Shown here piece after piece: positions 3,905-47,000 of a DNA stretch of 64,000 nt (position 1 is the stretch's first letter; each line of letters opens with the position of its first letter). The notes under the pieces are model-generated. The model saw only the letters and a list, made by a program, of their open reading frames with translations, did not search any database and was not told where the DNA came from. Source of the DNA: Ylistrum balloti (lineage: Eukaryota); contig NW_026782016.1 of assembly GCF_031769215.1 (NCBI RefSeq), positions 1,054,001 through 1,118,000 of the forward strand, read 5' to 3'. The translations under genes and the position numbers were made by a program.

Positions 3905-5565
3905 CTTTAGATCACACCAACTGTCCACCATTCTTTAGATCACACCAACTGTCCACCATCCTTTAGATCACACCAACTGTCCACCATCCTTTAGATCACA
4001 CCAACTGTCCGCCGTCCTTTAGATCACACCAACTGTCCACCGTCCTTTAGATCACACCAACTGTCCACCATCCTTTAGATCACACCAACTGTCCACCATC
4101 CTTTAGATCACACCAACTGTCCACCATTCTTTAGATCACACCAACTGTCCGCCATTCTTTAGATCACACCAACTGTCCGCCATCCTTTAGATCACACCAA
4201 CTGTCCGCCATCCTTTAGATCACACCAACTGTCCGCCATCCTTTAGATCACACCAACTGTCCGCCATTCTTTAGATCACACCAACTGTCCGCCATCCTTT
4301 AGATCACACCAACTGTCCGCCATCCTTTAGATCACACCAACTGTCCACCATCCTTTAGATCACACCAACTGTCCACCATCCTTTAGATCACACCAACTGT
4401 CCGCCATTCTTTAGATCACACCAACTGTCCGCCATTCTTTAGATCACACCAACTGTCCGCCATCCTTTAGATCACACCAACTGTCCGCCATCCTTTAGAT
4501 CACACCAACTGTCCGCCATCCTTTAGATCACACCAACTGTCCGCCATTCTTTAGATCACACCAACTGTCCGCCATCCTTTAGATCACACCAACTGTCCGC
4601 CATCCTTTAGATCACACCAACTGTCCACCATTCTTTAGATCACACCAACTGTCCACCATCCTTTAGATCACACCAACTGTCCACCATTCTTTAGATCACA
4701 CCAACTGTCCACCATCCTTTAGATCACACCAACTGTCCATCATCCTTTAGATCACACCAACTGTCCACCATCCTTTAGATCACACCAACTGTCCACCATC
4801 CTTTAGATCACATCAACTGTCCACCATCCTTTAGATCACACCAACTGTCCACCATCGTTTAGATCACACCAACTGTCCATCATCCGTTAGATCACACCAA
4901 CTGTCCACCATCCTTTAGATCACACCAACTGTCCACCATCCTTTAGATCACACCAACTGTCCACCATCCTTTAGATCACACCAACTGTCCACCATCCTTT
5001 AGATCACACCAACTGTCCACCATCCTTTGATCACACCAACTGTCCACCATCCTTTAGATCACACCAACTTTCCATCATCCTTTAGATCACACCAACTGTC
5101 CACCATCCTTTAGATTACACCAACTGTCCACCATCCTTTAGATCACATCAACTGTCCACCATCCTTTAGATCACACCAACTGTCCACCATCCTTTAGATC
5201 ACACCAACTGTCCATCATCCGTTAGATCACACCAACTGTCCACCATCCTTTAGATCACACCAACTGTCCACCATTCTTTAGATCACACCAACTGCCCACC
5301 ATCCTTTAGATCACACCAACTGTCGACCATCCTTTAGATCACACCAACTGTCCACCATCCTTTAGATCACACCAACTGTCCGCCATCCTTTAGATCACAC
5401 CAACTGTCCACCATCCTTTAGATCACACCAACTGTCCGCCATCCTTTAGATCACACCAACTGTCCACCATCCTTTAGATCACACCAACTGTCCGCCATCC
5501 TTTAGATCACACCAACTGCCCACCATCCTTTAGATCACACCAACCGTCCATCATCCGTTAGATCA
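3905..5565. repeat. 28-bp tandem satellite/minisatellite, ~59 units (ctttagatcacaccaactgtccaccatc)
   Basis: Directly visible head-to-tail units with period 28 (3961, 3989, 4017...). There are no spacers. Variants are mainly ccacc/ccgcc and atc/att. Confidence 0.98.
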
Positions 5566-5932
5566 AATCACTTGAAAATGATCAATTAAATTATATTTTC
5601 ACTGTATGACATTCTAAAGACGTATCCTTACTAAAGATTTTTGTGTATTACCAGCTCATGAACTGCCAACGGTATAAGAATACCGAAAGCTCTCCGTAAG
5701 TTAGAGATAAGTGTCCAAGCACAGTGCTACTAAGCAATTGTTTTGGTCCTGACAGTTACTGTATGATACTAACCTTTTGGAGTACCAAGATTTTTGCGGA
5801 GTAAAAAATAAATCAAAGTACCGAAAGTACTGAAAGGCTAAACGTATTGAAAAATGTTCACAAATAACCGCTAAGCTATATTACTTTCCCCATACTCCTA
5901 CACTTTGGAGCCAAGATCGGTAAATTTTGTCT

Positions 5933-5982
5933 GAAAGGCCGTCGCAATAGGCTATTCGTATTGAGAACGTTTAGTCTAAAAA
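5933..5982 (+). repeat. 50-bp hairpin-containing element end; inverted copy at 9777-9826
   Basis: gaaaggccgtcgcaataggctattcgtattgagaacgtttagtctaaaaa is the reverse complement of 9777-9826 with about 5 mismatches. Confidence 0.8.
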
Positions 5983-6159
5983 CAGAAAGATACAAACTTT
6001 ATTTTAGAACATGCCGCAATCAACACTTTGTTTGAAACCTTGATTAATAAGAGTGAGACATTAATGTACATATTTGAATGTCTTTCTTTTCAGGAATTAT
6101 GTTATTACAAGGTAAAACCTTTTCCGTCCTATTCAGTAGTAATCCTTTTATAACAATAT

Positions 6160-27611: not shown

Positions 27612-28625
27612 CAGAACGTACTAATGTAGCTGTTCTGGAAATACAAGCAGACGGCTGTTCCAAAGTTCTTGAGACGGACCGCCAGTGGTCATTATGAATG
27701 AAGAACGTCACTGATGTGTTTCCCAGCATATCGACAGAGATTGGTGTAATGAAAGAGTTTGAGTACAATTATATTGAAGATTACAATAGCATGATTCAAG
27801 AGTTTTGTTGTAAACTGAAGCAAGTAGATTTGTGTTCTAGCCGGGATTTTACATTCAAAATTCCATTTGCTCTCTTAAAGATTTATGGTAAAACTGCATT
27901 AGGTAGTATGAAGAAGGCTATCGTTAAAGCAAACCTGACCGGGAAAATAGGTTGGATAGCAGACAAGATGAAAATTGAGAAAAACACATTTTTAAGGTTA
28001 TGTGCAAATGCTCTGGATAGTACCATATTGTTTATTCAAAGTAGTTTGGCAGGTCAGTCTTGCACAGGTACCAAAATAGTCTTAATGACCGGAGATTTAT
28101 CTGAATGTCCATTACTGCAGGCAAGCATGAAGTTGGTCTTTGGTATGATGAAATTCATGTTTCAATATTCTTTCCCTTGTGCTGCTAACATTGGTGCAGT
28201 CTTCTATGGACACACTCCTTTAGCTGTTGAGCCTGAGTTTACATATGGATTTCGTACTAATGCAATTTTTGATCCCAAAATTCATCCCGAGAACAAAAAG
28301 ATCTTTAACGAGAAAGACCAAACATATTATTGCCGAAATGCGTTTTCTAAACAGACAACCAGGGGAGAAATGCTGGGAATCAACATGGCCTAGAGTGACC
28401 AGCTCTATCACAATACATTTCTTACAGAACTCTATCACACTCCCTGAATATATCTCGATTGACAAAAATCCTAGATTTGTTGATGAACCATATTGGATTA
28501 CATTATTTAAAACACGATAATGATATGGCAATACATGTCCTGTTCCTGTTTGCAATAGCGGAACTCAGAATTGTAACCATTGATTGTTCTACTCAGGAGT
28601 TTACTGTGCACAGGCTTTCTTATCC
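27612..28625 (+). pseudogene. Decayed HSPA12 terminal exon (4b)
   Basis: Position-equivalent phase-1 acceptor (ccttttctgaag|CA). Collinear with exon 4a along its length (FDPKIHPENKKIFNEKDQTYYCRNAFSK vs FDSKIHDESRKFFNEDDKTYYCRNTFSK). In-frame TGA at 27695, TAG at 28391 and frameshifts after ~28430. Nucleotide-binding motifs are eroded. Confidence 0.85.
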
Positions 28626-32150: not shown

Positions 32151-33217
32151 GTGGAACGGTTGACATCACTGTGCACAAGGTTGAGGATGACCTGACACTT
32201 ACGGAGCTGGCCAGAGCCAGTGGTGGAGCTTGGGGTGGAACACAGGTAGACGAGGCTTTTAAGCAAATGATCATTAAAATTGTTGGTAACCCGATTATGC
32301 AAAGATTTAGTCGTGAGCAAACATCCGATTTTGTGGATATGTTCAGGGAATTTGAAACAAAAAAGAGATGTAATGTTGAAGGGACGCTATCAAAAAAGGT
32401 GACAATGAAAATTCCTATCGCTTTGAAGGAAATGTTCGAAGAAGAGACAGACGAGGATATAAAAGAAGTTGTGCTGCAAAGTTCTTACACTGGAAAACTT
32501 GAATGGGTTAATGATAAAATCCGGATAGCACCTGAGACCTTCAAGTCACTGTTTAACTGTGCTGTAGCTGATACAGTGTGTCACATCCAAAATCTCCTCA
32601 GCAAACCTACCTGTGAAGGAACGAAAACAATCCTCATGGTCGGGGGATTCGCAGAATGCCCTCATCTGCAGAAGGGTATTCACGAAGCTTTTCCACACTT
32701 ACGAATAGTCATTCCATATGAATGTGGATTATCCGTTTTAAAAGGGGCTGTGATATTTGGACATCGTCCAAAAACAATTTCCGCACGAAAAATGAAATAT
32801 ACGTATGGCATTGCAACAAACAAGAAATTCAAGCCATTCAGACATGATCCTAACAAGAAAAAAACCTTGAAAGGCGTTGATTACTGTACAGAATTATTTG
32901 ACCAGCATGTGAGGGGTGGAACAACTGTGAAGTATGATGAAATTCAAAGCGACCGCAAATACAACCCATTATATGATGACCAAACGACCCTCGATTTTCC
33001 TGTGTACCAGTCCACAGATGATGACCCTGAATATGTCACTGACAAGAGTTGTGAATATATAGGGAATATGTCCATTGACATACCAGATGCCAGTGAAGGA
33101 ACTAGCAGAGCGGTCCGTGTCAGGATGATCTTCGGTGACACAGAGTTAAAACTGGAGGCAACACAAGAAGGCACAAACAATAAAACAGTAGCTAAATTCA
33201 ACTTTCTTGGAGATTAA
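32151..33217 (+). CDS. HSPA12A: Intact HSPA12 terminal exon (4c) with no exons 1-3 of its own
   Basis: Acceptor tttttgcactttaag|GT GGA ACG GTT GAC (phase 1). 1067 nt, the same length as exon 4a, open to TAA. Motifs GGTVDIT, SGGAWGG and MVGGFAEC. AATAAA at ~33284. Confidence 0.85.
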
Positions 33218-35390: not shown

Positions 35391-38300
35391 TTATATTTCG
35401 TAACAAAGACCACAAGAACAAGTGGAAGCGAATTCAGAGAATTTGAAAGCGAAATAGCCGGTGTGTGTGGTAGAGGAGGAACGCCTTCTCCGATCTGGGC
35501 TTTCTTGATCCTCGATGAGGGCGTCAGTGTTACACAGATTAGGATCGTCCTGAATTATGTCAAAGTAATAATCTTTGTCCGGAATGAAAAAGTCACAGAA
35601 CACGAGAAACCTTTGTGTAAAGACTCCACTTTCCGAACATCGCGAGGCATTGTCACAGCAATATTCCCTATAAAACAACAATTGAATGCACATTTTATCA
35701 TTGAAATAAAATGTCCGTGAAAATTTTAATCAATCGCTTGATATTTAAAAAACTAACGGGAATGATTTTTTGATATTTCGTATATTGCCAGTGATATGAT
35801 AGAAATATTCTGTTCTGCAAAACTGTGTACCCTCTTTTACGGAAATATCCCTTTCCTGGTTAAATTGACCATTCAAAACGATACTTTTAGTAACAAAATC
35901 TAGGGTCACATACTGTGTCTTCGCCTTTGAAATGCATGCAAAAGTTTGATAGGGTACAGAATGTTTTACTTTTTTCCAGGGTAATCAAAACATGGAAACG
36001 ATTTATATCTAGCCACATTAAAAGCATAAATTTGCAAAAACTGTTTAATTGGAACGTCAAAAATATGTATTCTACAAGTTATCAAAACTCTATCAAAACC
36101 TATTCATAGGGAAGTCGTCATACGGACAATTAGCATTGTAATCAAAGCTAATAAAAAGCAAGCATTGGTTTATTTATAGAAAACAATATCCATATGTTAT
36201 CTATCCTGTATTTACCTTGTGCAGGTTATCTCCTGCACATTTTGCAGATCCGGTCTTGCTACCAAACACAGTACTTTACCGTCATGTTTGAAATATCCAT
36301 GTATTTTCTTTGATTCACTTGGACAAACAGGCGTCCCCCTGTTGTAAAATATTTAGGTGTAAAAGTAAATATAATTGAATATAATATATATATATTTATT
36401 TAATTTTTATTGTTTACCGGTGTGTAAACTGCATTTTTACAGCGATTTTAAATGATGCGCATTAGCGCGTCGTGTTGAAAGTATCGGTTAAAATATGCAG
36501 AGTACACAATAGTTAACAACAAAAAGAAAACTTAGGTTTTATATTACATTTTGACGGTTATTTGTATGCACTACTTAACACGTATGAAATGATAATTGTC
36601 ATCTATTTGGGGACGTTATGCACACTGACGGGCCAGCCCGACAACTCATGGAAAAGCAAAATATTTTATTCTATGTTGGTGTTAAAGGTTGTCAGACTTG
36701 TTGTTTTACCCAAGTGTAACAACACTTTCGTAGTTAAGGTTAAATAGGGGATAGTCTCCTACGTGTACACACTGTGCCACGTACCATTCTGTATGTATGT
36801 CATAAGCCCTATATATGTCTGCAAATAACGAGATTATTTCCGTTATGCCTATTTATCTTTATCAATAAGAATTTCTAAATGTTCTCATCCGCAATTAACT
36901 ACACATGTTATAGCAAATATTCCTGTTCACTGGTTTATATATAAACTTACGTTGATGGATGCGGATCTTCCTCCTCAACCTTTGACAGTCGATGTATATA
37001 GCTAAACGCCCTGGAGTTCTCACGAAGTCTCGACGTCATCCTTTCCCTACATTTCAATGAACACGTGGATTTTTTGCTGTATTGTCTGTTTATTTAAAAC
37101 ATTTCGCGTTGTAAAAAGAAGTTCATATATTTTCATACGTATACAGAAACTTAGTAGTTTATGAGAGTGAATTATTTGAAGATCAATGAATATATCGTAA
37201 CGTGCATAGATTAAACCATTCACTGTACCACAGGAACTTGGCACGAATTTCTTACCCTCGGATCATTTGTATTACAAATTTATTAAAGACCTGCTTCAGT
37301 ACTTACAGTGTATTTCTTCTAACATTTACAACAGAGAGACACATTTACCACAGAGAGACACACTTATCCCTGAGACACTTTTATCCCAGAGACACCACAG
37401 AGAGACACCCTAAGCACAAAGAGACATACCACAGAGAGACACACTTATCCCAGAGACTCATTTACCACAGAGACACATACCACAGAGGCACATTTACCAC
37501 AGAGAGACACATTCATCCCAGAGACACCACAGAGAGACAAACTTAACACACAGAGACTCTCTTACCACAGCGAGACACACTTATCACAGAGAGACACACA
37601 TACCACAGACATATTTACCACAGAAATATACTTACCACAGAGATACACTTACCATAGAGACATACTTACCACAGAGATACATTTACCACAGACACATTTA
37701 CCACAGAGATACACTTACCACAGAGACATACTTACCACAGAGATACACTTACCACAGAGACACATTTATCCAAGAGACACCATAGAGAGACAAACTTAAC
37801 ACATAGAGACACCCTTACCACAGCGAGATACACTTATCACAGAGAGACACACATACCACAGAGACACAAATATACTTACCACAGAGAGACGTTCCTACCA
37901 CAAAGATACACTTTCCACACAGACACATTCACCACAGAGACACACTTACCACAGATACACATTTACCACAGAGATACACTTACCACAGAGACACGTTTAC
38001 CACAGAGAGACGCGCTTGCCACAGAGAGACACACTTACCACAGAGATACACTAACCACAGAGACACATTTACCACAGAATGACGCACTTACCACAGAGAG
38101 ACGTGCTTACCACAGAGAGACACACTTATCCATGAAACACCACAGAGACAAACATATCACACACAGACACCCTAAGCATTTGGAGACATACCAAATAGAG
38201 ACACACTTACCACTGAGAAAAATATTCCAGAGTCCGTAAAGGTTCATATACATAGTTCTTTTTGTCCACCTCCGTTTTGTCCACGTATATAACGCCACAA

Positions 38301-38413
38301 TCGTCCTCGCTTTGATCGGAGCCAGAAGAGATGCCGACACAAATACAAAAGAGGATGGCTAACCCAAGTGGTGATGTCTGATATGAAAGATTAAGGTTAG
38401 AGTTCCGAAACAT
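35391..38413 (-). CDS. Secreted Cys-rich protein, Spaetzle/neurotrophin-like cystine-knot candidate; 4 exons, ~232 aa
   Basis: Exons 38413(or acceptor 38377)-38211, 37046-36951, 36338-36216 and 35667-35391. All introns are phase 2 with strong GTAAGT/GTAAAT donors and YAG acceptors, and they join without stops. Signal-like LAILFCICVGISSG; domain PVCPS...LVARPDLQNVQEITC...CC...TQRFL...FSEFASTCSCGLCYEI. Confidence 0.75.
37325..38210. repeat. ~17-19-bp AC/AG-rich minisatellite (cacacttaccacagaga) in an intron of the cystine-knot gene
   Basis: Dozens of degenerate units, with a larger internal block duplication (~37520-37610 vs ~37770-37860). Confidence 0.92.
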
Positions 38414-39885
38414 ACATAAGTAGAGGCTAGTTATGAAGTATACCTAAGACAAAACTATTAAATTTTATTTCACGACAAGATGATAAAGAAAAAGTAGACA
38501 TAACTTAAATCCCCTATAACGCAATAATGATAGTAAATTATTGTTTTTAATCATTGCATGATATACAACTAATTCTGTTCGTATATATGTATTTATATAT
38601 ATATCATTATTACTCCTTATATATGTCGAGATGTCCTTCAAGAGTGTTTAAATATTTTGAAATAAATTCAATGTACTTCAAGTAACATTGTCTATTCTCA
38701 AGCAGTTGACTCTGTGTGAGTGGAGGTGGTGGTGTGTGCGTGTGTGTGTTAATTTCATGATGACCCTGTGCCATTTAAATTGAATCCTCATCCATAATAT
38801 TTACCACAGCGGCATGAATACAACATCTTAAAAAAAAAATACTTCGTATTGCACTTTCGCGTAATTGGCCAGATATGTGTAAAACAGATCTGATTGGCTG
38901 AAATTACGCGACATCACAGAACACTAGCACGAGCACATTTTTACGTAATGTTTTAAAGAAATACCTGCTCACTTATTACATTTTCCATTATATCCTCATC
39001 ACATTAAACTTAGAAAAAGGTTTTATATTGAGCATCTTTAAATGTATACTTCTAGATACACAGCAAGCTAAATCATACCTGCACTATGTACTTCATCGTT
39101 GTTCAATATGTCACTTTCTTGCTGTAGATAGATTGACACGTAGATTTCAGCAGATTAACGCCAAGATAAACAAAACGAATGCCATGTAGATTTCAGGAGA
39201 CATCATGGAAAAAGTACAGCCCACTTGCCAACCTGTTTATGATTCTATATTTGTGTTTGAAATTATTTTATCCGTTCAAACTGTTTGTATTGAGAAGTCA
39301 TTGTTTTAAATCATGCCTTAGGTACGTACTATCTATACTCGTTTGATGTCTTTAAAAGTTCAATGTATTTTGTATGTACTTGCCGAGAGAGAAGTTTGAA
39401 GAAGTGTAATGATCACTTTAAAGGTAATTATTGTTGTTTTTTTGTATATTAAGAGGTAGTTACGAAACCGAACACGCCTCAGGGCGCTCCGCATTTGTAA
39501 ACACATTTTCCTTTTACTTGTATCAAAGGATATGTAACGCTTCAAGGTTATAGTGACTCTAGATAATCTTACTTCTAAATGGATCGTGTGTTATAAAAAC
39601 TATAATGACTAAAGAACACATTTGGCATAAATACATTTTTCTTAACAAACTAGCCAAAATGAAAAGTACGTTTTCTCTCGCATCTCAAATTAGACCAAGT
39701 CCGCGTCGCACGCCGATTAAGAGCGACAAATAATTCTTGTTTGATTTAATTTGATCTGTTGCATCAAATCATACAAAGGGATGGGGCAAAGATATCAAAC
39801 TTATATTAAGCCTTTCCCCAACAATATTTAACATTTTTTGAAAATTATTAATTCTAGTTATAATATTTATTTTATGTATCAACAA

Positions 39886-44080: not shown

Positions 44081-47000
44081 TTACTCCAAAAGTTCGAACT
44101 GCGCATTTGTGGTTTTCTCGGTTTTTTTCACTTTTGCCTCCACGGATAGCTCTGTGCCACCAAACTTAAGTCTTGCCGATACTACTCGGTCCGATGCAGG
44201 GACATCCATTGGAAGATCCACCAGCATCTTTCCGATATATGTACAATTATCAGTCTCACAGTACTTAAGCTCATCTTTCTCGGATATGTAAACTCTCAAG
44301 ACCATTTTCGTAGCTTCATCAGTCAACGGGTGATAATCTTGAGGCTCGGTTGCTTCCCCTATGTCAACTGACTGTCCTCTAGCAACATGCTTGCTAAACC
44401 GATCATCACAATACAATTTCCCTTTTACTGTTGATTTCTTATTCTCTGGATCACCCTGCCTGAACTCTTCTGACACTTGAATACCGTAAGTGTGTTTCAT
44501 CACACGCGTAGAAATTACTTTAGTGTTAAATCCGAATAGCACTGCTCCTTTCAGGACCGACAATCCAGCATCCTGGGGAATTACGATTTTCTTCGAGTGA
44601 CCGAATCTTTCTTTCACTGCATGTCGTAGCATTGGAGACTCGGAAAACCCTCCAACCATCAGAATAACAGATGTTCCAGCCGCGTTTTCTTCATCAAAAA
44701 TTCGTTCGACGTGTTCTACGATCACCTCGCATGTAGTTTCGAACAATGCCTTTGCTTCAGAGGCATCGACTCTGATTTTGTCGCCGATCCATGCAATTTT
44801 TCTTCCTTTTCGTCCCTGCGACAAGGATTCGCGTAGCCCCTCCCCTTTCATGTCCTGGTAGACCTCATTAAGAGCTATTGGGACTTTGAATGTGACTTTT
44901 TGGTCGAGTTCCGGCGTGATAGTTCGCTTCTTGATTTCGAATTCACGAACAATATCTAAGTAGGAATCTCTATGGTTTAATTTAAATGCGTCCCATACTT
45001 CGCCGCCAACCAAGTCTATGAGAAACTGTTCATATGCCTCGTCTACTCTGGTTCCTCCCCAGTCTCCGCCGTTCGCCATATATACCTGGTGGAGAGATCC
45101 GTCGCTCTGAACCTGTTGTACAGTGATATCTACTGTTCCACCTAAAACCAAAGAAAGTATATGTGGACAACAAGTTAACTATCATCTAACAAATAGTTTT
45201 CATTTTCACAAAATGCTATATATTTTTTCTCTTTTAATAAACAAGCCCATGATATTATCTTTTATGCTGTAACGTATGACCCTACAATTTTAAAGACGAT
45301 ATTCAAAAATATTTTTCTTCAATACAGGTCAAAATCGGTTGATATTGGGTTACTGAAAAATGGTTAATGTATTAAAATCAGCTATTCTTATATATTTACA
45401 TGTATCGTTCATTAGCCAGATTTCCGTGATGAATATCAAAGATATACAGAATGTATGTAAACTATAACAAAAGACAATGTATTGTCTTTACAACGGCAAA
45501 GACAAGCGGACACTAATTGTCCGAAATCACATCGGACACTCACCCCCTGCGTCCAGCACCAAATACTTGGTACCAGGACATATTGCTTCTAAGCCAGCAA
45601 TGTTTTCGTTTTCTCTGTGTTGTTCCTGTCCACGCTTTCCTATCGGAATGTGCTTGCAGTATATCGATGCCGCCTCCGGCTCCAGAGCTATGTCAAGATG
45701 GTCAGATCTGATGCCGGCCTAATGAACAAGTACATTTTATAAGCGGTTATTATACACTCAATCAATGTGTGTTAAAATGATTTGAGCAACAATTGTTTGT
45801 AATACGCCTATGTCGTTCTAGTTCGAAACATTTAAACAAAAACAAACAAAAAGACATTGTGTCACTGTTTGTGCAGACTTCATTATGTCATTTCAGTAAT
45901 GTTCATAATAATCTTAAATATTTCAGCGATGCCGAAAATCTTCTTTCAGTCAAATGACGAATTATTTAGAATTAAGCTTGGTAACTTATGAAACAGATAA
46001 GGTAATGCATTATTTGCTATTACGTAATTTCCAGAGAAAGAGTTCCTTTTGAACCCCCACCCAAAATGACTACCAGTAGGTTATAATAAGTATCTAAAAG
46101 GGTTTCTTGTAAGGGGTACCAAGAAAAATTGGGGCATGGTCTTAAAATCAACCCTTTCAGACACTTGTACTATATTTACCAGGTATAATAACCCATTGGT
46201 AGCCACTTTGGGTTGGGGGAAGGGGGGGGGGGGGTCAAAAGGATCCAGATGATTGCTAATTTTTTCACGGTACATTAGACACGCTTTAAGGAAGCCCCTA
46301 TCTTTAGCGTACCAAACAACAACAACAACAACAATAAAAAAAGTCTGCGACGTGTAGGTGACCGTTCAGTCAACTGGATATCATACTACGAAAACAAAAC
46401 AAAAAACACCCACAAACAAGAGACAAACAACAAAAAGAAAGTTCAAAGGAGGGGAAATGGTGAAGAGAAATGACCAAAACGAAATAACGGAAGCCAGTTG
46501 TACGAGATATCATGTCCTCTGTCTGTACCTGGCATCCAAAAAAGGAAAACAATATCATACATATCATAGGCAATCATACTTGTTTGGCAGCTTCTCTCAT
46601 AAATTGCTTGGCTTTATCAGACCAGATGGCTGGAACAGTAAGAACCCAATGGACCTCCTCGTCTTTGATACCTTCACTGATTGATCGCTCATGCATTGCA
46701 CGAAGCATGTGTCCACGTAGGTAATGGATGATCGCCGTAAATACATCCATGGCATTCATAATATTACCCTTGTCATCCTCGAGTGTGCACTGGCGAGAAA
46801 TATTCTAAAACGAGTACAAACGTTAAGAAAAATTTAATTAGGATGTATTTATTCATAAGATAAAATATCAAATATTACTACATATATAGTGGTGGAAGGC
46901 GAATGTGACCGGGGACGAACATGTATTACTGTATCAGCGATCTATATTATATTAGATATAATTTATTAATGACAATCTTATGTTTATTGTAGGTCTACGA

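What the first reader, a model, noticed from the sequence alone, without database searches (positions are those of the whole stretch)
35391..38413. Hidden Spaetzle/neurotrophin-like cystine-knot gene nested between the two HSPA12 arms
Seen: four small minus-strand exons join through three phase-2 introns into ~232 aa: signal-like segment, ~70-aa pro region, then a domain with 11 Cys. The ORF track shows only unlinked pieces and misses two exons. Established: the Spaetzle domain runs PLC.S..K...IVN...Q.IQIEEC..PC...C.Q....F.IPSCCKC. The spacing here (PVCPSESKK..LVA..LQNVQEITC..CC...TQ...FSEFASTCSC) follows it. Inference: this is a secreted Toll-ligand or neurotrophin-like cytokine, a class poorly defined in molluscs, sitting inside a stress-gene cluster. 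Caveat: the knot Cys normally just before Q (CxQ) reads FTQ here, so the knot connectivity may be atypical. The odd Cys count could allow a covalent dimer.
Basis: partly seen in the sequence, partly recalled or inferred. Interest (0 to 1): 0.7.

Follow-up and report, generated by a model that had tools for sequence, protein, structure and literature searches.

The report
Scallop-only cystine-knot cytokine-like gene
This is a real scallop gene, already in RefSeq as an "uncharacterized protein", for a small secreted protein predicted to fold like cystine-knot signalling proteins (Noggin, IL-17, coagulogen, Spaetzle, NGF), but it belongs to an unnamed family found only in scallops and cannot be called a Spaetzle or neurotrophin.

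Summary
They reappear exactly in RefSeq XP_060065913.1 (LOC132546221, Ylistrum balloti, 226 aa), so the gene is not hidden.

The start codon is probably wrong. RefSeq and the Pecten maximus orthologue both use an 18-nt coding micro-exon (window 39096-39079) spliced to 38377.

The gene is one of about 10 paralogues in this genome. It has 1:1 orthologues in four scallop genera and keeps its place beside an HSPA12 gene. A profile search of 1.84 billion proteins found 11 representatives; the 10 whose source I looked up are all from scallops.

No sequence method links it to a named family:
- Pfam gives nothing at E<=10.
- A PDB profile search gives nothing relevant.
- hhalign against genuine bivalve Spaetzle/neurotrophin and against scallop Noggin alignments gives probability 0.3%.

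Two confident AlphaFold models (pLDDT 76 and 86.5) match almost only cystine-knot cytokines. Noggin, IL-17F and coagulogen tie at Z 5.3-5.7. NGF scores 3.7. Solved Spaetzle is not in the top 50. Spaetzle clusters lead only in the ESM Atlas.

Verdict: the cystine-knot cytokine fold is supported, and Spaetzle/Toll-ligand identity is not. The "pro region" is more likely an integral helical cap. The likely cleavage site is a multibasic motif inside a disordered finger loop. No RNA data were available.

The scan noted two other cystine-knot-like genes elsewhere in this genome.

The parts
39079..39096 (-). Probable true first coding exon. Its 18 nt encode MKYIVQ and are followed by a GT donor.
   Evidence: A pattern search finds ATGAAGTACATAGTGCAG followed by gtatga. 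It matches the N-terminus of RefSeq P0001. The P. maximus orthologue has the same 18-nt first coding exon.
38378..38413 (-). This is most likely intron sequence ending in the acceptor ...tcatatcag.
   Evidence: The stretch is in frame here, but it is absent from RefSeq P0001. In P. maximus a stop lies two codons upstream of the acceptor.
38211..38377 (-). Coding exon 2. It holds the hydrophobic core of the signal peptide (LGLAILFCICVGISSG) and the start of the N-terminal segment, including the conserved Cys and the EPLRT motif.
37322..38128 (-). Minisatellite inside the intron, about 46 copies of a 17-19 bp unit. Each unit repeats the exon's donor context (ctgtGGTAAGTgt).
   Evidence: Tandem Repeats Finder and the sequence itself. 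DNA contigs of run X1 show length variants here.
36951..37046 (-). Coding exon 3. It encodes the helical part of the N-terminal segment.
   Evidence: AG/GT borders. Modelled as helices 56-71 and 73-84 with pLDDT 90-95.
36216..36338 (-). Coding exon 4, the first half of the knot domain (GTPVCPSESKKIHGYFKHDGKVLCLVARP...ITC). It is the best conserved part of the family.
   Evidence: Homologous exons lie upstream of the paralogous last exons: L004 at E 3e-14 and 58% identity, L002 at E 4e-6. Invariant C99, G108, C118, P123 and C133.
35391..35667 (-). Last coding exon plus the stop codon. It holds CC-x5-C-x13-C, a roughly 44-residue disordered acidic linker, then the GYFAF... strand ending in CSCGLC.
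   Evidence: Long strands 143-161 and 206-222 in the model.
35481..35492 (-). Codons for RRRR (residues 194-197 of P0001), a candidate furin-type cleavage site inside the finger-loop linker.
   Evidence: The sequence itself. 12 of 14 linker-bearing family members have KR or RR in the linker and 7 have a multibasic R/K-x-K/R-R type site. pLDDT is below 50 at residues 194-202.
32171..33217 (+).
Evidence: 40% identical to the minus-strand ORF 44081-45151.
44081..45151 (-). Context: last exon of the minus-strand HSPA12-like gene. The cystine-knot gene lies downstream of it on the same strand.
   Evidence: The same order, an HSP70-like gene and then the orthologue on the same strand, is seen in P. 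maximus.

Best explanation
A five-exon gene (window 39096 to 35391, minus strand) encodes a 226-aa secreted protein. It belongs to a scallop-restricted multigene family that adopts the cystine-knot growth-factor/cytokine fold.

Shown:
- The gene model is conserved in four scallop genera.
- Ten Cys are conserved across the family, arranged as C-x18-C-x14-C-x4-CC-x5-C-x13-C ... C-x-C-x2-C.
- The models are confident, and their structural neighbours are almost all cystine-knot cytokines.

Inferred:
- After signal-peptide removal the N-terminal segment (one short strand plus two helices) stays packed on the knot, as in Noggin and coagulogen. It is not shed as a propeptide.
- The protein acts outside the cell as a ligand or ligand-binding protein, probably as a dimer, as such proteins usually are.
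- A furin-type protease cuts at the multibasic site in the disordered loop at the tip of the second beta-finger. This would give a two-chain form held together by the knot disulfides.

The receptor or partner is unknown.
For: Gene model:
- The model is identical to RefSeq XP_060065913.1.
- The orthologue in P. maximus has the same five exons and the same HSP70-family neighbour.
- A 100/100-supported clade holds one orthologue per species.

Family:
- About 10 loci in this genome, partly in tandem, share the exon phase.
- The family alignment has 10 conserved Cys, eight invariant and two in at least 90% of rows.

Fold:
- AlphaFold gives pLDDT 76.4 / pTM 0.72 for P0001 and 86.5 / 0.80 for the linker-less paralogue P0011.
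- Foldseek matches sclerostin (prob 0.99), PDGF-B (0.98) and PDGF-A precursor (E 7e-3).
- VIA gives Noggin Z 5.4-5.7 (108-110 residues), coagulogen 4.8-5.3 (126-131 residues), IL-17F 5.4, SOST 4.5 and NGF 3.7.
- In the ESM Atlas, Spaetzle clusters reach TM 0.42-0.51 over residues 41-226, and the nearest feature clusters are all in the cystine-knot clan.

Other features:
- The N-terminus is hydrophobic and ends in SSG|S.
- Basic sites are common in the linker.
Against: - There is no RNA evidence for expression or for the junctions.
- All structural scores are modest: Z<6, TM mostly <0.5, Foldseek E>1e-3. They cannot choose among the cystine-knot subfamilies.
- No sequence method links the family to any known cystine-knot family.
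- Cleavage at the loop, dimerisation and ligand function are inferences only.
- One subfamily lacks the linker entirely, so loop cleavage cannot be essential to the fold's function.
Confidence: 0.6

Rival explanations
1. It is a true Spaetzle/neurotrophin orthologue or paralogue: a pro-cytokine cleaved before the knot whose dimeric C-terminal domain binds a Toll-like or Trk/p75-like receptor.
For: - Spaetzle clusters are the top shape matches in the ESM Atlas: TM 0.42 with my model and 0.51 with the Atlas's own model.
- The nearest feature cluster for P0001 is a molluscan cluster in which 15% of members carry PF16077 (score 0.91, 186 shared features).
Against: - PF16077 and PF00243 give nothing at E<=10.
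- The Spaetzle HMM finds only another locus in this genome.
- hhalign probability is 0.3%.
- NGF scores only Z 3.6-3.7 and solved Spaetzle is absent from the top 50.
- The orthologues have no basic site before the knot...PHPSTGTPVC...SVGTPVC...PAGMPVC.
- The N-terminal segment is modelled as part of the fold.
Confidence: 0.12
2. It is a Noggin-like or Trunk-like protein: a dimeric cystine-knot antagonist or ligand of the BMP or Torso type that keeps its N-terminal helical part. The variable insertion at the finger tip would parallel the 'noggin-like' genes.
For: - Noggin is the top solved-structure match for both models, spanning the helical part and the knot (Z 4.8-5.7, 107-110 residues).
- Atlas features of P0005 are nearest an arthropod cluster named 'Spaetzle domain-containing' in which 53% of members carry the Noggin Pfam family.
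- Noggin-like protein 5 is the second shape hit.
- The total length is similar, and the C-terminal pattern CxCxxC resembles Noggin's CxCxC.
- This genome's own noggin-like gene (L012) has an insertion of basic residues at the equivalent finger tip.
Against: - The Noggin Pfam family PF05806 gives nothing on the proteins. In the genome it finds other loci only.
- hhalign against the scallop Noggin/noggin-like alignment gives probability 0.25%.
- The Z scores tie with IL-17F and coagulogen.
Confidence: 0.12
3. It is a coagulogen-like defence protein: a haemolymph precursor in which proteolysis exposes a surface that drives self-association (clotting or immobilisation) rather than receptor signalling.
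For: - Coagulogen gives the longest structural alignment, 126-131 of 175 residues at Z 4.8-5.3 and TMq 0.44. It covers the N-terminal strand, the helices and the knot.
- The family members carry basic sites in the linker.
- The family is expanded in tandem and lineage-specific, as defence genes often are.
Against: - There is no sequence similarity.
- Coagulogen's cuts flank the helix, whereas here the conserved basic sites lie in the finger loop.
- The linker-less subfamily has no such site.
- There are no expression or protein data.
Confidence: 0.05
4. It is a gene-prediction artefact or a decaying pseudogene with no product.
For: No RNA run holds it. All family members are computational predictions named 'uncharacterized'.
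Against: - The frame is open and all splice sites are canonical.
- 1:1 orthologues at 48-58% identity in four genera keep every core Cys.
- Exon structure and synteny are conserved.
- The fold prediction is confident.
Confidence: 0.04

Closest known systems
Noggin / noggin-like proteins (Pfam PF05806)
   Same: It is a secreted protein of about 230 aa with an N-terminal helical part packed on a C-terminal cystine knot. Noggin is the top solved-structure match (Z 5.4-5.7). The chain ends in a cluster of three Cys. A variable insertion sits at the tip of the second finger, as in noggin-like genes.
   Different: Neither HMM nor profile-profile comparison finds any similarity. The Cys number and spacing differ: 10 conserved against 9, and CxCxxC against CxCxC. 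BMP binding is untested.
Horseshoe-crab coagulogen (PDB 1aoc)
   Same: It gives the longest structural superposition, 126-131 residues covering strand, helices and an NGF-like knot. Both are precursors with internal basic sites.
   Different: There is no sequence similarity. Coagulogen has 16 Cys and is cut on both sides of the helix, while here the candidate site is in the finger loop. Clotting is untested.
Spaetzle / neurotrophins (PF16077, PF00243)
   Same: The fold class is the same. Spaetzle clusters lead the ESM Atlas shape and feature searches. The first-Cys region has a similar look (G-x-P-x-C...).
   Different: There is no HMM hit and hhalign gives 0.3% against genuine bivalve members. 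The genuine scallop gene is elsewhere (C380). It is about 150-170 aa, with KR before the knot and seven Cys. Here no cleavage site precedes the knot, and solved NGF scores only Z 3.7.
IL-17 family (PF06083)
   Same: IL-17A and IL-17F dominate the Foldseek list for the full-length model, and IL-17F reaches Z 5.4. The family is expanded in molluscs (PMC11087794). Both have C-x4/5-C ... C-x-C motifs.
   Different: There is no HMM hit. By my own knowledge, IL-17 has only two of the three knot disulfides and no helical N-terminal cap.

Membership tests
Spaetzle (PF16077) | Match to the family HMM at or above its cut-off of 27 bits | tested here: not met
   There is no hit at E<=10 for the four exon translations or for 10 full-length family members. 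A genome-wide scan with PF16077 finds only C380:813663-813944.
Spaetzle (PF16077) | Profile-profile similarity to genuine bivalve Spaetzle/neurotrophin proteins | tested here: not met
   hhalign of A3 against A5 (11 bivalve proteins carrying PF16077 and PF00243) gives probability 0.27% and E 0.23.
Spaetzle (PF16077) | Cystine-knot fold of the C-terminal domain | tested here: met
   The structural neighbours of both models are almost all cystine-knot cytokines. Spaetzle clusters lead in the ESM Atlas. The disulfide topology itself was not checked.
Spaetzle (PF16077) | Prodomain removed by cleavage at a basic site directly before the knot | tested here: not met
   The four orthologues have no Arg/Lys motif there except LGR-P in P. 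maximus. The segment is modelled as packed on the knot at pLDDT 90-95.
Spaetzle (PF16077) | Binds and activates a Toll receptor | not testable with these tools
   This needs binding or signalling assays.
NGF/neurotrophin (PF00243) | HMM match and close structural match to NGF | tested here: not met
   There is no Pfam hit. NGF chains score Z 3.6-3.7, below Noggin, coagulogen, IL-17 and SOST.
Noggin (PF05806) | HMM match, or profile similarity to scallop Noggin/noggin-like proteins | tested here: not met
   There is no Pfam hit. The genome scan finds other loci. hhalign of A3 against A6 gives probability 0.25%.
Noggin (PF05806) | Overall architecture: helical N-terminal part on a cystine knot | tested here: inconclusive
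   Noggin is the top VIA match over 107-110 residues, but at Z 4.8-5.7 it ties with coagulogen and IL-17F.
IL-17 (PF06083) | HMM match | tested here: not met
   There is no hit at E<=10. Structurally IL-17F reaches Z 5.4.
Cystine-knot growth-factor superfamily | Two long beta-hairpin fingers held by three disulfides, one of which threads the ring made by the other two | tested here: inconclusive
   The fingers and the Cys placement fit: strands 143-161 and 206-222, and 10 conserved Cys. Foldseek probability is up to 0.99 for sclerostin and 0.98 for PDGF-B.

The most novel reading that the evidence does not exclude
This is a scallop-specific family of cystine-knot cytokines with an activation logic not described for this fold. 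The N-terminal helical cap is retained, and maturation is by a furin-type cut inside the finger-2 loop, giving a two-chain disulfide-held ligand. The HSPA12-linked member, kept in synteny for the whole scallop radiation, would act as a stress- or infection-induced signal.
Probability: 0.15. Interest if true: 0.6.

Novelty: new variant of a known kind. Interest (0 to 1): 0.42.

Why it matters
Bivalve immunity and development rely on many Toll-like, IL-17 and BMP receptors whose ligands are mostly unknown. An unnamed family of about 10 genes, conserved across scallops, with a confident cystine-knot cytokine fold is a concrete set of candidate ligands or antagonists. They can be expressed and tested against those receptors.

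The result also shows that sequence-only motif matching to Spaetzle is unreliable here. The genome has a genuine Spaetzle/neurotrophin gene at another locus.

Tried and rejected
- Pfam on each exon and on 10 full-length relatives gave nothing at E<=10.
- A word-index protein search with the last exon was blank because of its length limits.
- A PDB sequence-profile search gave only a spurious TRIM21 hit at E 0.064.
- hhalign against one scallop Spaetzle domain, the bivalve Spaetzle/NT alignment and the scallop Noggin alignment gave probabilities of 0.25-0.5%.
- The search for RNA runs gave none. The one run found is DNA contigs that cover introns, so the junctions and expression could not be tested.
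- Pfam on the flanking large ORFs gave no hit at E<=0.001.
- A literature search for the family's accession numbers gave no papers.
- I considered whether LR-T before the helices and GR-P/S before the knot mimic coagulogen's two cleavage sites. I rejected this as weak. The window's own protein has TGT-P at the second site, and Pro follows the Arg in several members.
It was sent to no search or folding tool. Searches were done exon by exon, and through the public protein P0001, which has the same junctions.
Full report
**Observation**

On the minus strand, the segments 38413-38211, 37046-36951, 36338-36216 and 35667-35391 are each bordered by AG and GT. The three introns are phase 2. Joined in a script, the segments give an open frame of 232 codons with 14 Cys, 11 of them after residue 100. 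So the sequence facts in the finding are correct.

The joined model was not sent to any search tool. I searched exon by exon and then worked with a public protein that carries the same junctions.

**The gene is already annotated, and its start differs**

A profile of the last exon and its four best paralogous exons (A1) was run against 1.84 billion representative proteins. It found only 11 proteins. The best, P0001, is XP_060065913.1, "uncharacterized protein LOC132546221 [Ylistrum balloti]", 226 aa.

Its N-terminus is MKYIVQ instead of MFRNSNLNLSYQ. I found the matching 18 nt at window 39096-39079, followed by GT. The acceptor is the ...tcatatcag that ends at 38378.

The Pecten maximus orthologue (P0014) maps to its genome as five coding exons. 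Its first is also 18 nt (MKRAMK), and a stop lies two codons upstream of its second exon. All four orthologues begin with MK.

Either way the N-terminus has a single hydrophobic core (LGLAILFCICVGI) followed by SSG|S. This looks like a signal peptide. SignalP was not available.

**RNA evidence**

No RNA run holds the stretch. The one run listed consists of DNA contigs that cover intron sequence. Junctions and expression remain untested by reads.

**A scallop-restricted family**

- In this genome the family profile finds about 10 loci: C159 (this gene), two on C61, three on C308, one on C173, about three on C599 and one on C605.
- Paralogous last exons have the same phase-2 acceptor. Homologues of the preceding exon lie upstream.
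- Every family member whose source was reported is a RefSeq/GenBank "uncharacterized" or "hypothetical" protein of Ylistrum, Mizuhopecten, Pecten or Argopecten. The source of P0010 was not looked up.
- A maximum-likelihood tree puts the window's protein in a 100/100-supported clade with exactly one protein from each of the other three genera (48-58% identity). A linker-less subfamily likewise has one member per genus.
- The P. maximus orthologue lies just downstream of an HSP70-family gene on the same strand.
- The gene is therefore real, old within scallops and constrained. At the level sequence searches can reach, it has no relatives outside scallops. One caveat applies: the exhaustive search used only the last exon.

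**Family anatomy (A3; residues numbered on P0001)**

| Residues | Feature |
|---|---|
| 1-25 | Signal peptide |
| 26-95 | N-terminal segment with a conserved Cys-Gly, the motif EPLRT and two helices |
| 96-160 | G-x-P-x-C ... G-Y-W/F-K-x-x-G-x-x-L-C ... P ... C-x4-CC-x5-C-x13-C |
| 161-204 | Acidic linker of 7 to 93 residues across the family |
| 205-226 | GYFAF-x-x-D-x-F-P-x-x-C-x-C-x-x-C |

- Ten Cys are conserved. Eight are invariant: C99, C118, C133, C139, C145, C159, C218 and C223. C138 and C220 are present in at least 90% of rows.
That comes from the alignment register: invariant C159 lies 10 residues further on.
- The odd-Cys argument also fails. The mature chain here has 12 Cys. The linker Cys is absent from the P. 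maximus orthologue. Totals across the family range from 11 to 17.
- Twelve of the 14 linker-bearing members have KR or RR in the linker, and seven have a multibasic site. Here it is RRRR at 194-197, window 35492-35481.

**Sequence-based classification fails**

- Pfam gives no family at E<=10 for the exons or for 10 full-length members.
- The family profile finds nothing relevant among PDB sequences.
- The Spaetzle HMM finds one locus in this genome, on C380 (37.7 bits). Its relatives are bivalve proteins of 130-190 aa that carry both PF16077 and PF00243. They have a KR site before the knot and seven Cys. hhalign between that alignment and this family gives probability 0.27%.
- The Noggin HMM finds noggin, a noggin-like gene and a weaker third locus elsewhere. 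hhalign against them gives 0.25%.

**Structure-based classification succeeds at the fold level**

AlphaFold2 with the 18-sequence alignment gives pLDDT 76.4 / pTM 0.72 for P0001. Residues 41-90 and 101-160 have block means of 89-96, and 211-220 has 92. The signal peptide and linker are low. For the mature linker-less paralogue P0011 it gives 86.5 / 0.80. Both models show a short N-terminal strand and two helices, then short strands and two very long antiparallel strands.

- Foldseek against the PDB returns IL-17A/F, VEGF-B, PDGF-A precursor and sclerostin for P0001, at E 0.05-0.2.
- For P0011, Foldseek returns PDGF-A precursor (E 7e-3), sclerostin (prob 0.99, TMt 0.61), PDGF-B (0.98), Noggin, NT-3 and coagulogen (TMq 0.44).
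- VIA-align over about 48,000 representative chains puts coagulogen (Z 5.1 and 4.8; 127 and 126 residues) and Noggin (Z 4.8 and 5.4) first for both models. Then come SOST, IL-17A, Gremlin, vWF-CTCK, IL-25, Norrin, PDGF, VEGF, NGF (3.6-3.7) and PTTH (2.9).
- The second look at Foldseek's top 1000 gives Noggin 5.7, IL-17F 5.4 and coagulogen 5.3 (131 residues). No Spaetzle entry appears among the 50 rows shown, which reach down to Z 4.1.
- In the ESM Atlas, a Spaetzle-5 cluster is the first shape match (TM 0.42). With the Atlas's own ESMFold model, a mosquito Spaetzle cluster reaches TM 0.51 over 155 residues.
- The language-model feature searches list only Spaetzle, Noggin/Trunk-like, PTTH-like, NGF/BDNF and IL-17-tinged clusters, at scores of 0.88-0.91.
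- All scores are modest, so the subfamily cannot be chosen. The near-exclusive return of cystine-knot cytokines from two predictors and four search methods makes the fold assignment solid. I could not inspect coordinates, so the threaded disulfide is not verified.

**Mechanism**

What is shown:
- a conserved gene for a small protein with a signal-like N-terminus;
- ten conserved Cys;
- a predicted cystine-knot cytokine fold with an N-terminal helical cap and a disordered, often multibasic finger loop.

What is inferred:
- The protein is secreted.
- The 70-residue N-terminal segment is not a shed propeptide. No basic site precedes the knot in the orthologues, and the segment is modelled confidently on the knot. 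Only Noggin and coagulogen align across it.
- It acts extracellularly as a ligand or ligand trap, probably as a dimer.
- Furin-type cleavage in the loop would give a two-chain, disulfide-linked form.
- The linker-less subfamily shows that the loop is not needed for the fold.

Published work groups NGF, TGF, PDGF, Spaetzle, Trunk and IL-17 as one cystine-knot superfamily, notes its tolerance of sequence divergence, and notes large IL-17 expansions in molluscs (PMC11087794). This fits an orphan, lineage-specific offshoot.

**Comparison and novelty**

The family works like a cystine-knot cytokine, but it fails every sequence-based membership test for Spaetzle, NGF, Noggin and IL-17. It is best described as an unnamed, scallop-restricted variant of the cystine-knot cytokine kind. 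No paper mentions its accession numbers.

The scan's earlier notes record two other cystine-knot-like genes elsewhere in this genome (s1-238026, s1-234347). By their descriptions (three exons; mussel relatives or no relatives) they are different genes. I did not test them.

**Verdict**

Interest is moderate.

Noticed in passing
window 37322-38128: The intron after the signal-peptide exon holds about 46 tandem copies of a 17-19 bp unit, and each copy carries a consensus 5' splice site (GGTAAGT). The array begins as a continuation of the real donor at 38210. DNA contigs of run X1 show length variants here (a 341-bp skip and a 34-bp back-step). It could offer many cryptic donors.
   Followed up: partly
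G000:C380:813663-813944 (L010): The genuine Spaetzle/neurotrophin gene of this scallop scores 37.7 bits with PF16077. Its bivalve relatives (P0019-P0029) carry both the NGF and Spaetzle Pfam families and have a conserved KR site before the knot.
   Followed up: partly
G000:C538:114964-115566 (L011), C538:141954-142610 (L012), C177:997457-997699 (L013): A Noggin gene and a noggin-like gene lie 27 kb apart. The noggin-like gene has a basic insertion of about 30 residues between two late cysteines. A third, short Noggin/Trunk-like ORF of 153 aa lies on another contig.
   Followed up: partly
G000:C308:5489-26990 and C61:675640-699122: Paralogues of the window's gene lie in tandem clusters, three on C308 and two on C61. 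This suggests recent local duplication of the family.
   Followed up: partly
P0002 and P0004 (Argopecten irradians RefSeq models): P0002 starts with a second partial copy of the knot domain and has no signal peptide. P0004 carries a 140-residue N-terminal extension ahead of the signal-like segment. Both look like fused or mis-started gene models.
   Followed up: no
window 4001-6000: The composition profile shows an outlier here: GC 0.445 against about 0.35 elsewhere, and GC skew -0.525. I did not examine it.
   Followed up: no
window 27698-28393 (+): A 231-aa ATG ORF lies inside the plus-strand HSPA12 gene region and has no Pfam hit at E<=0.001.
   Followed up: no
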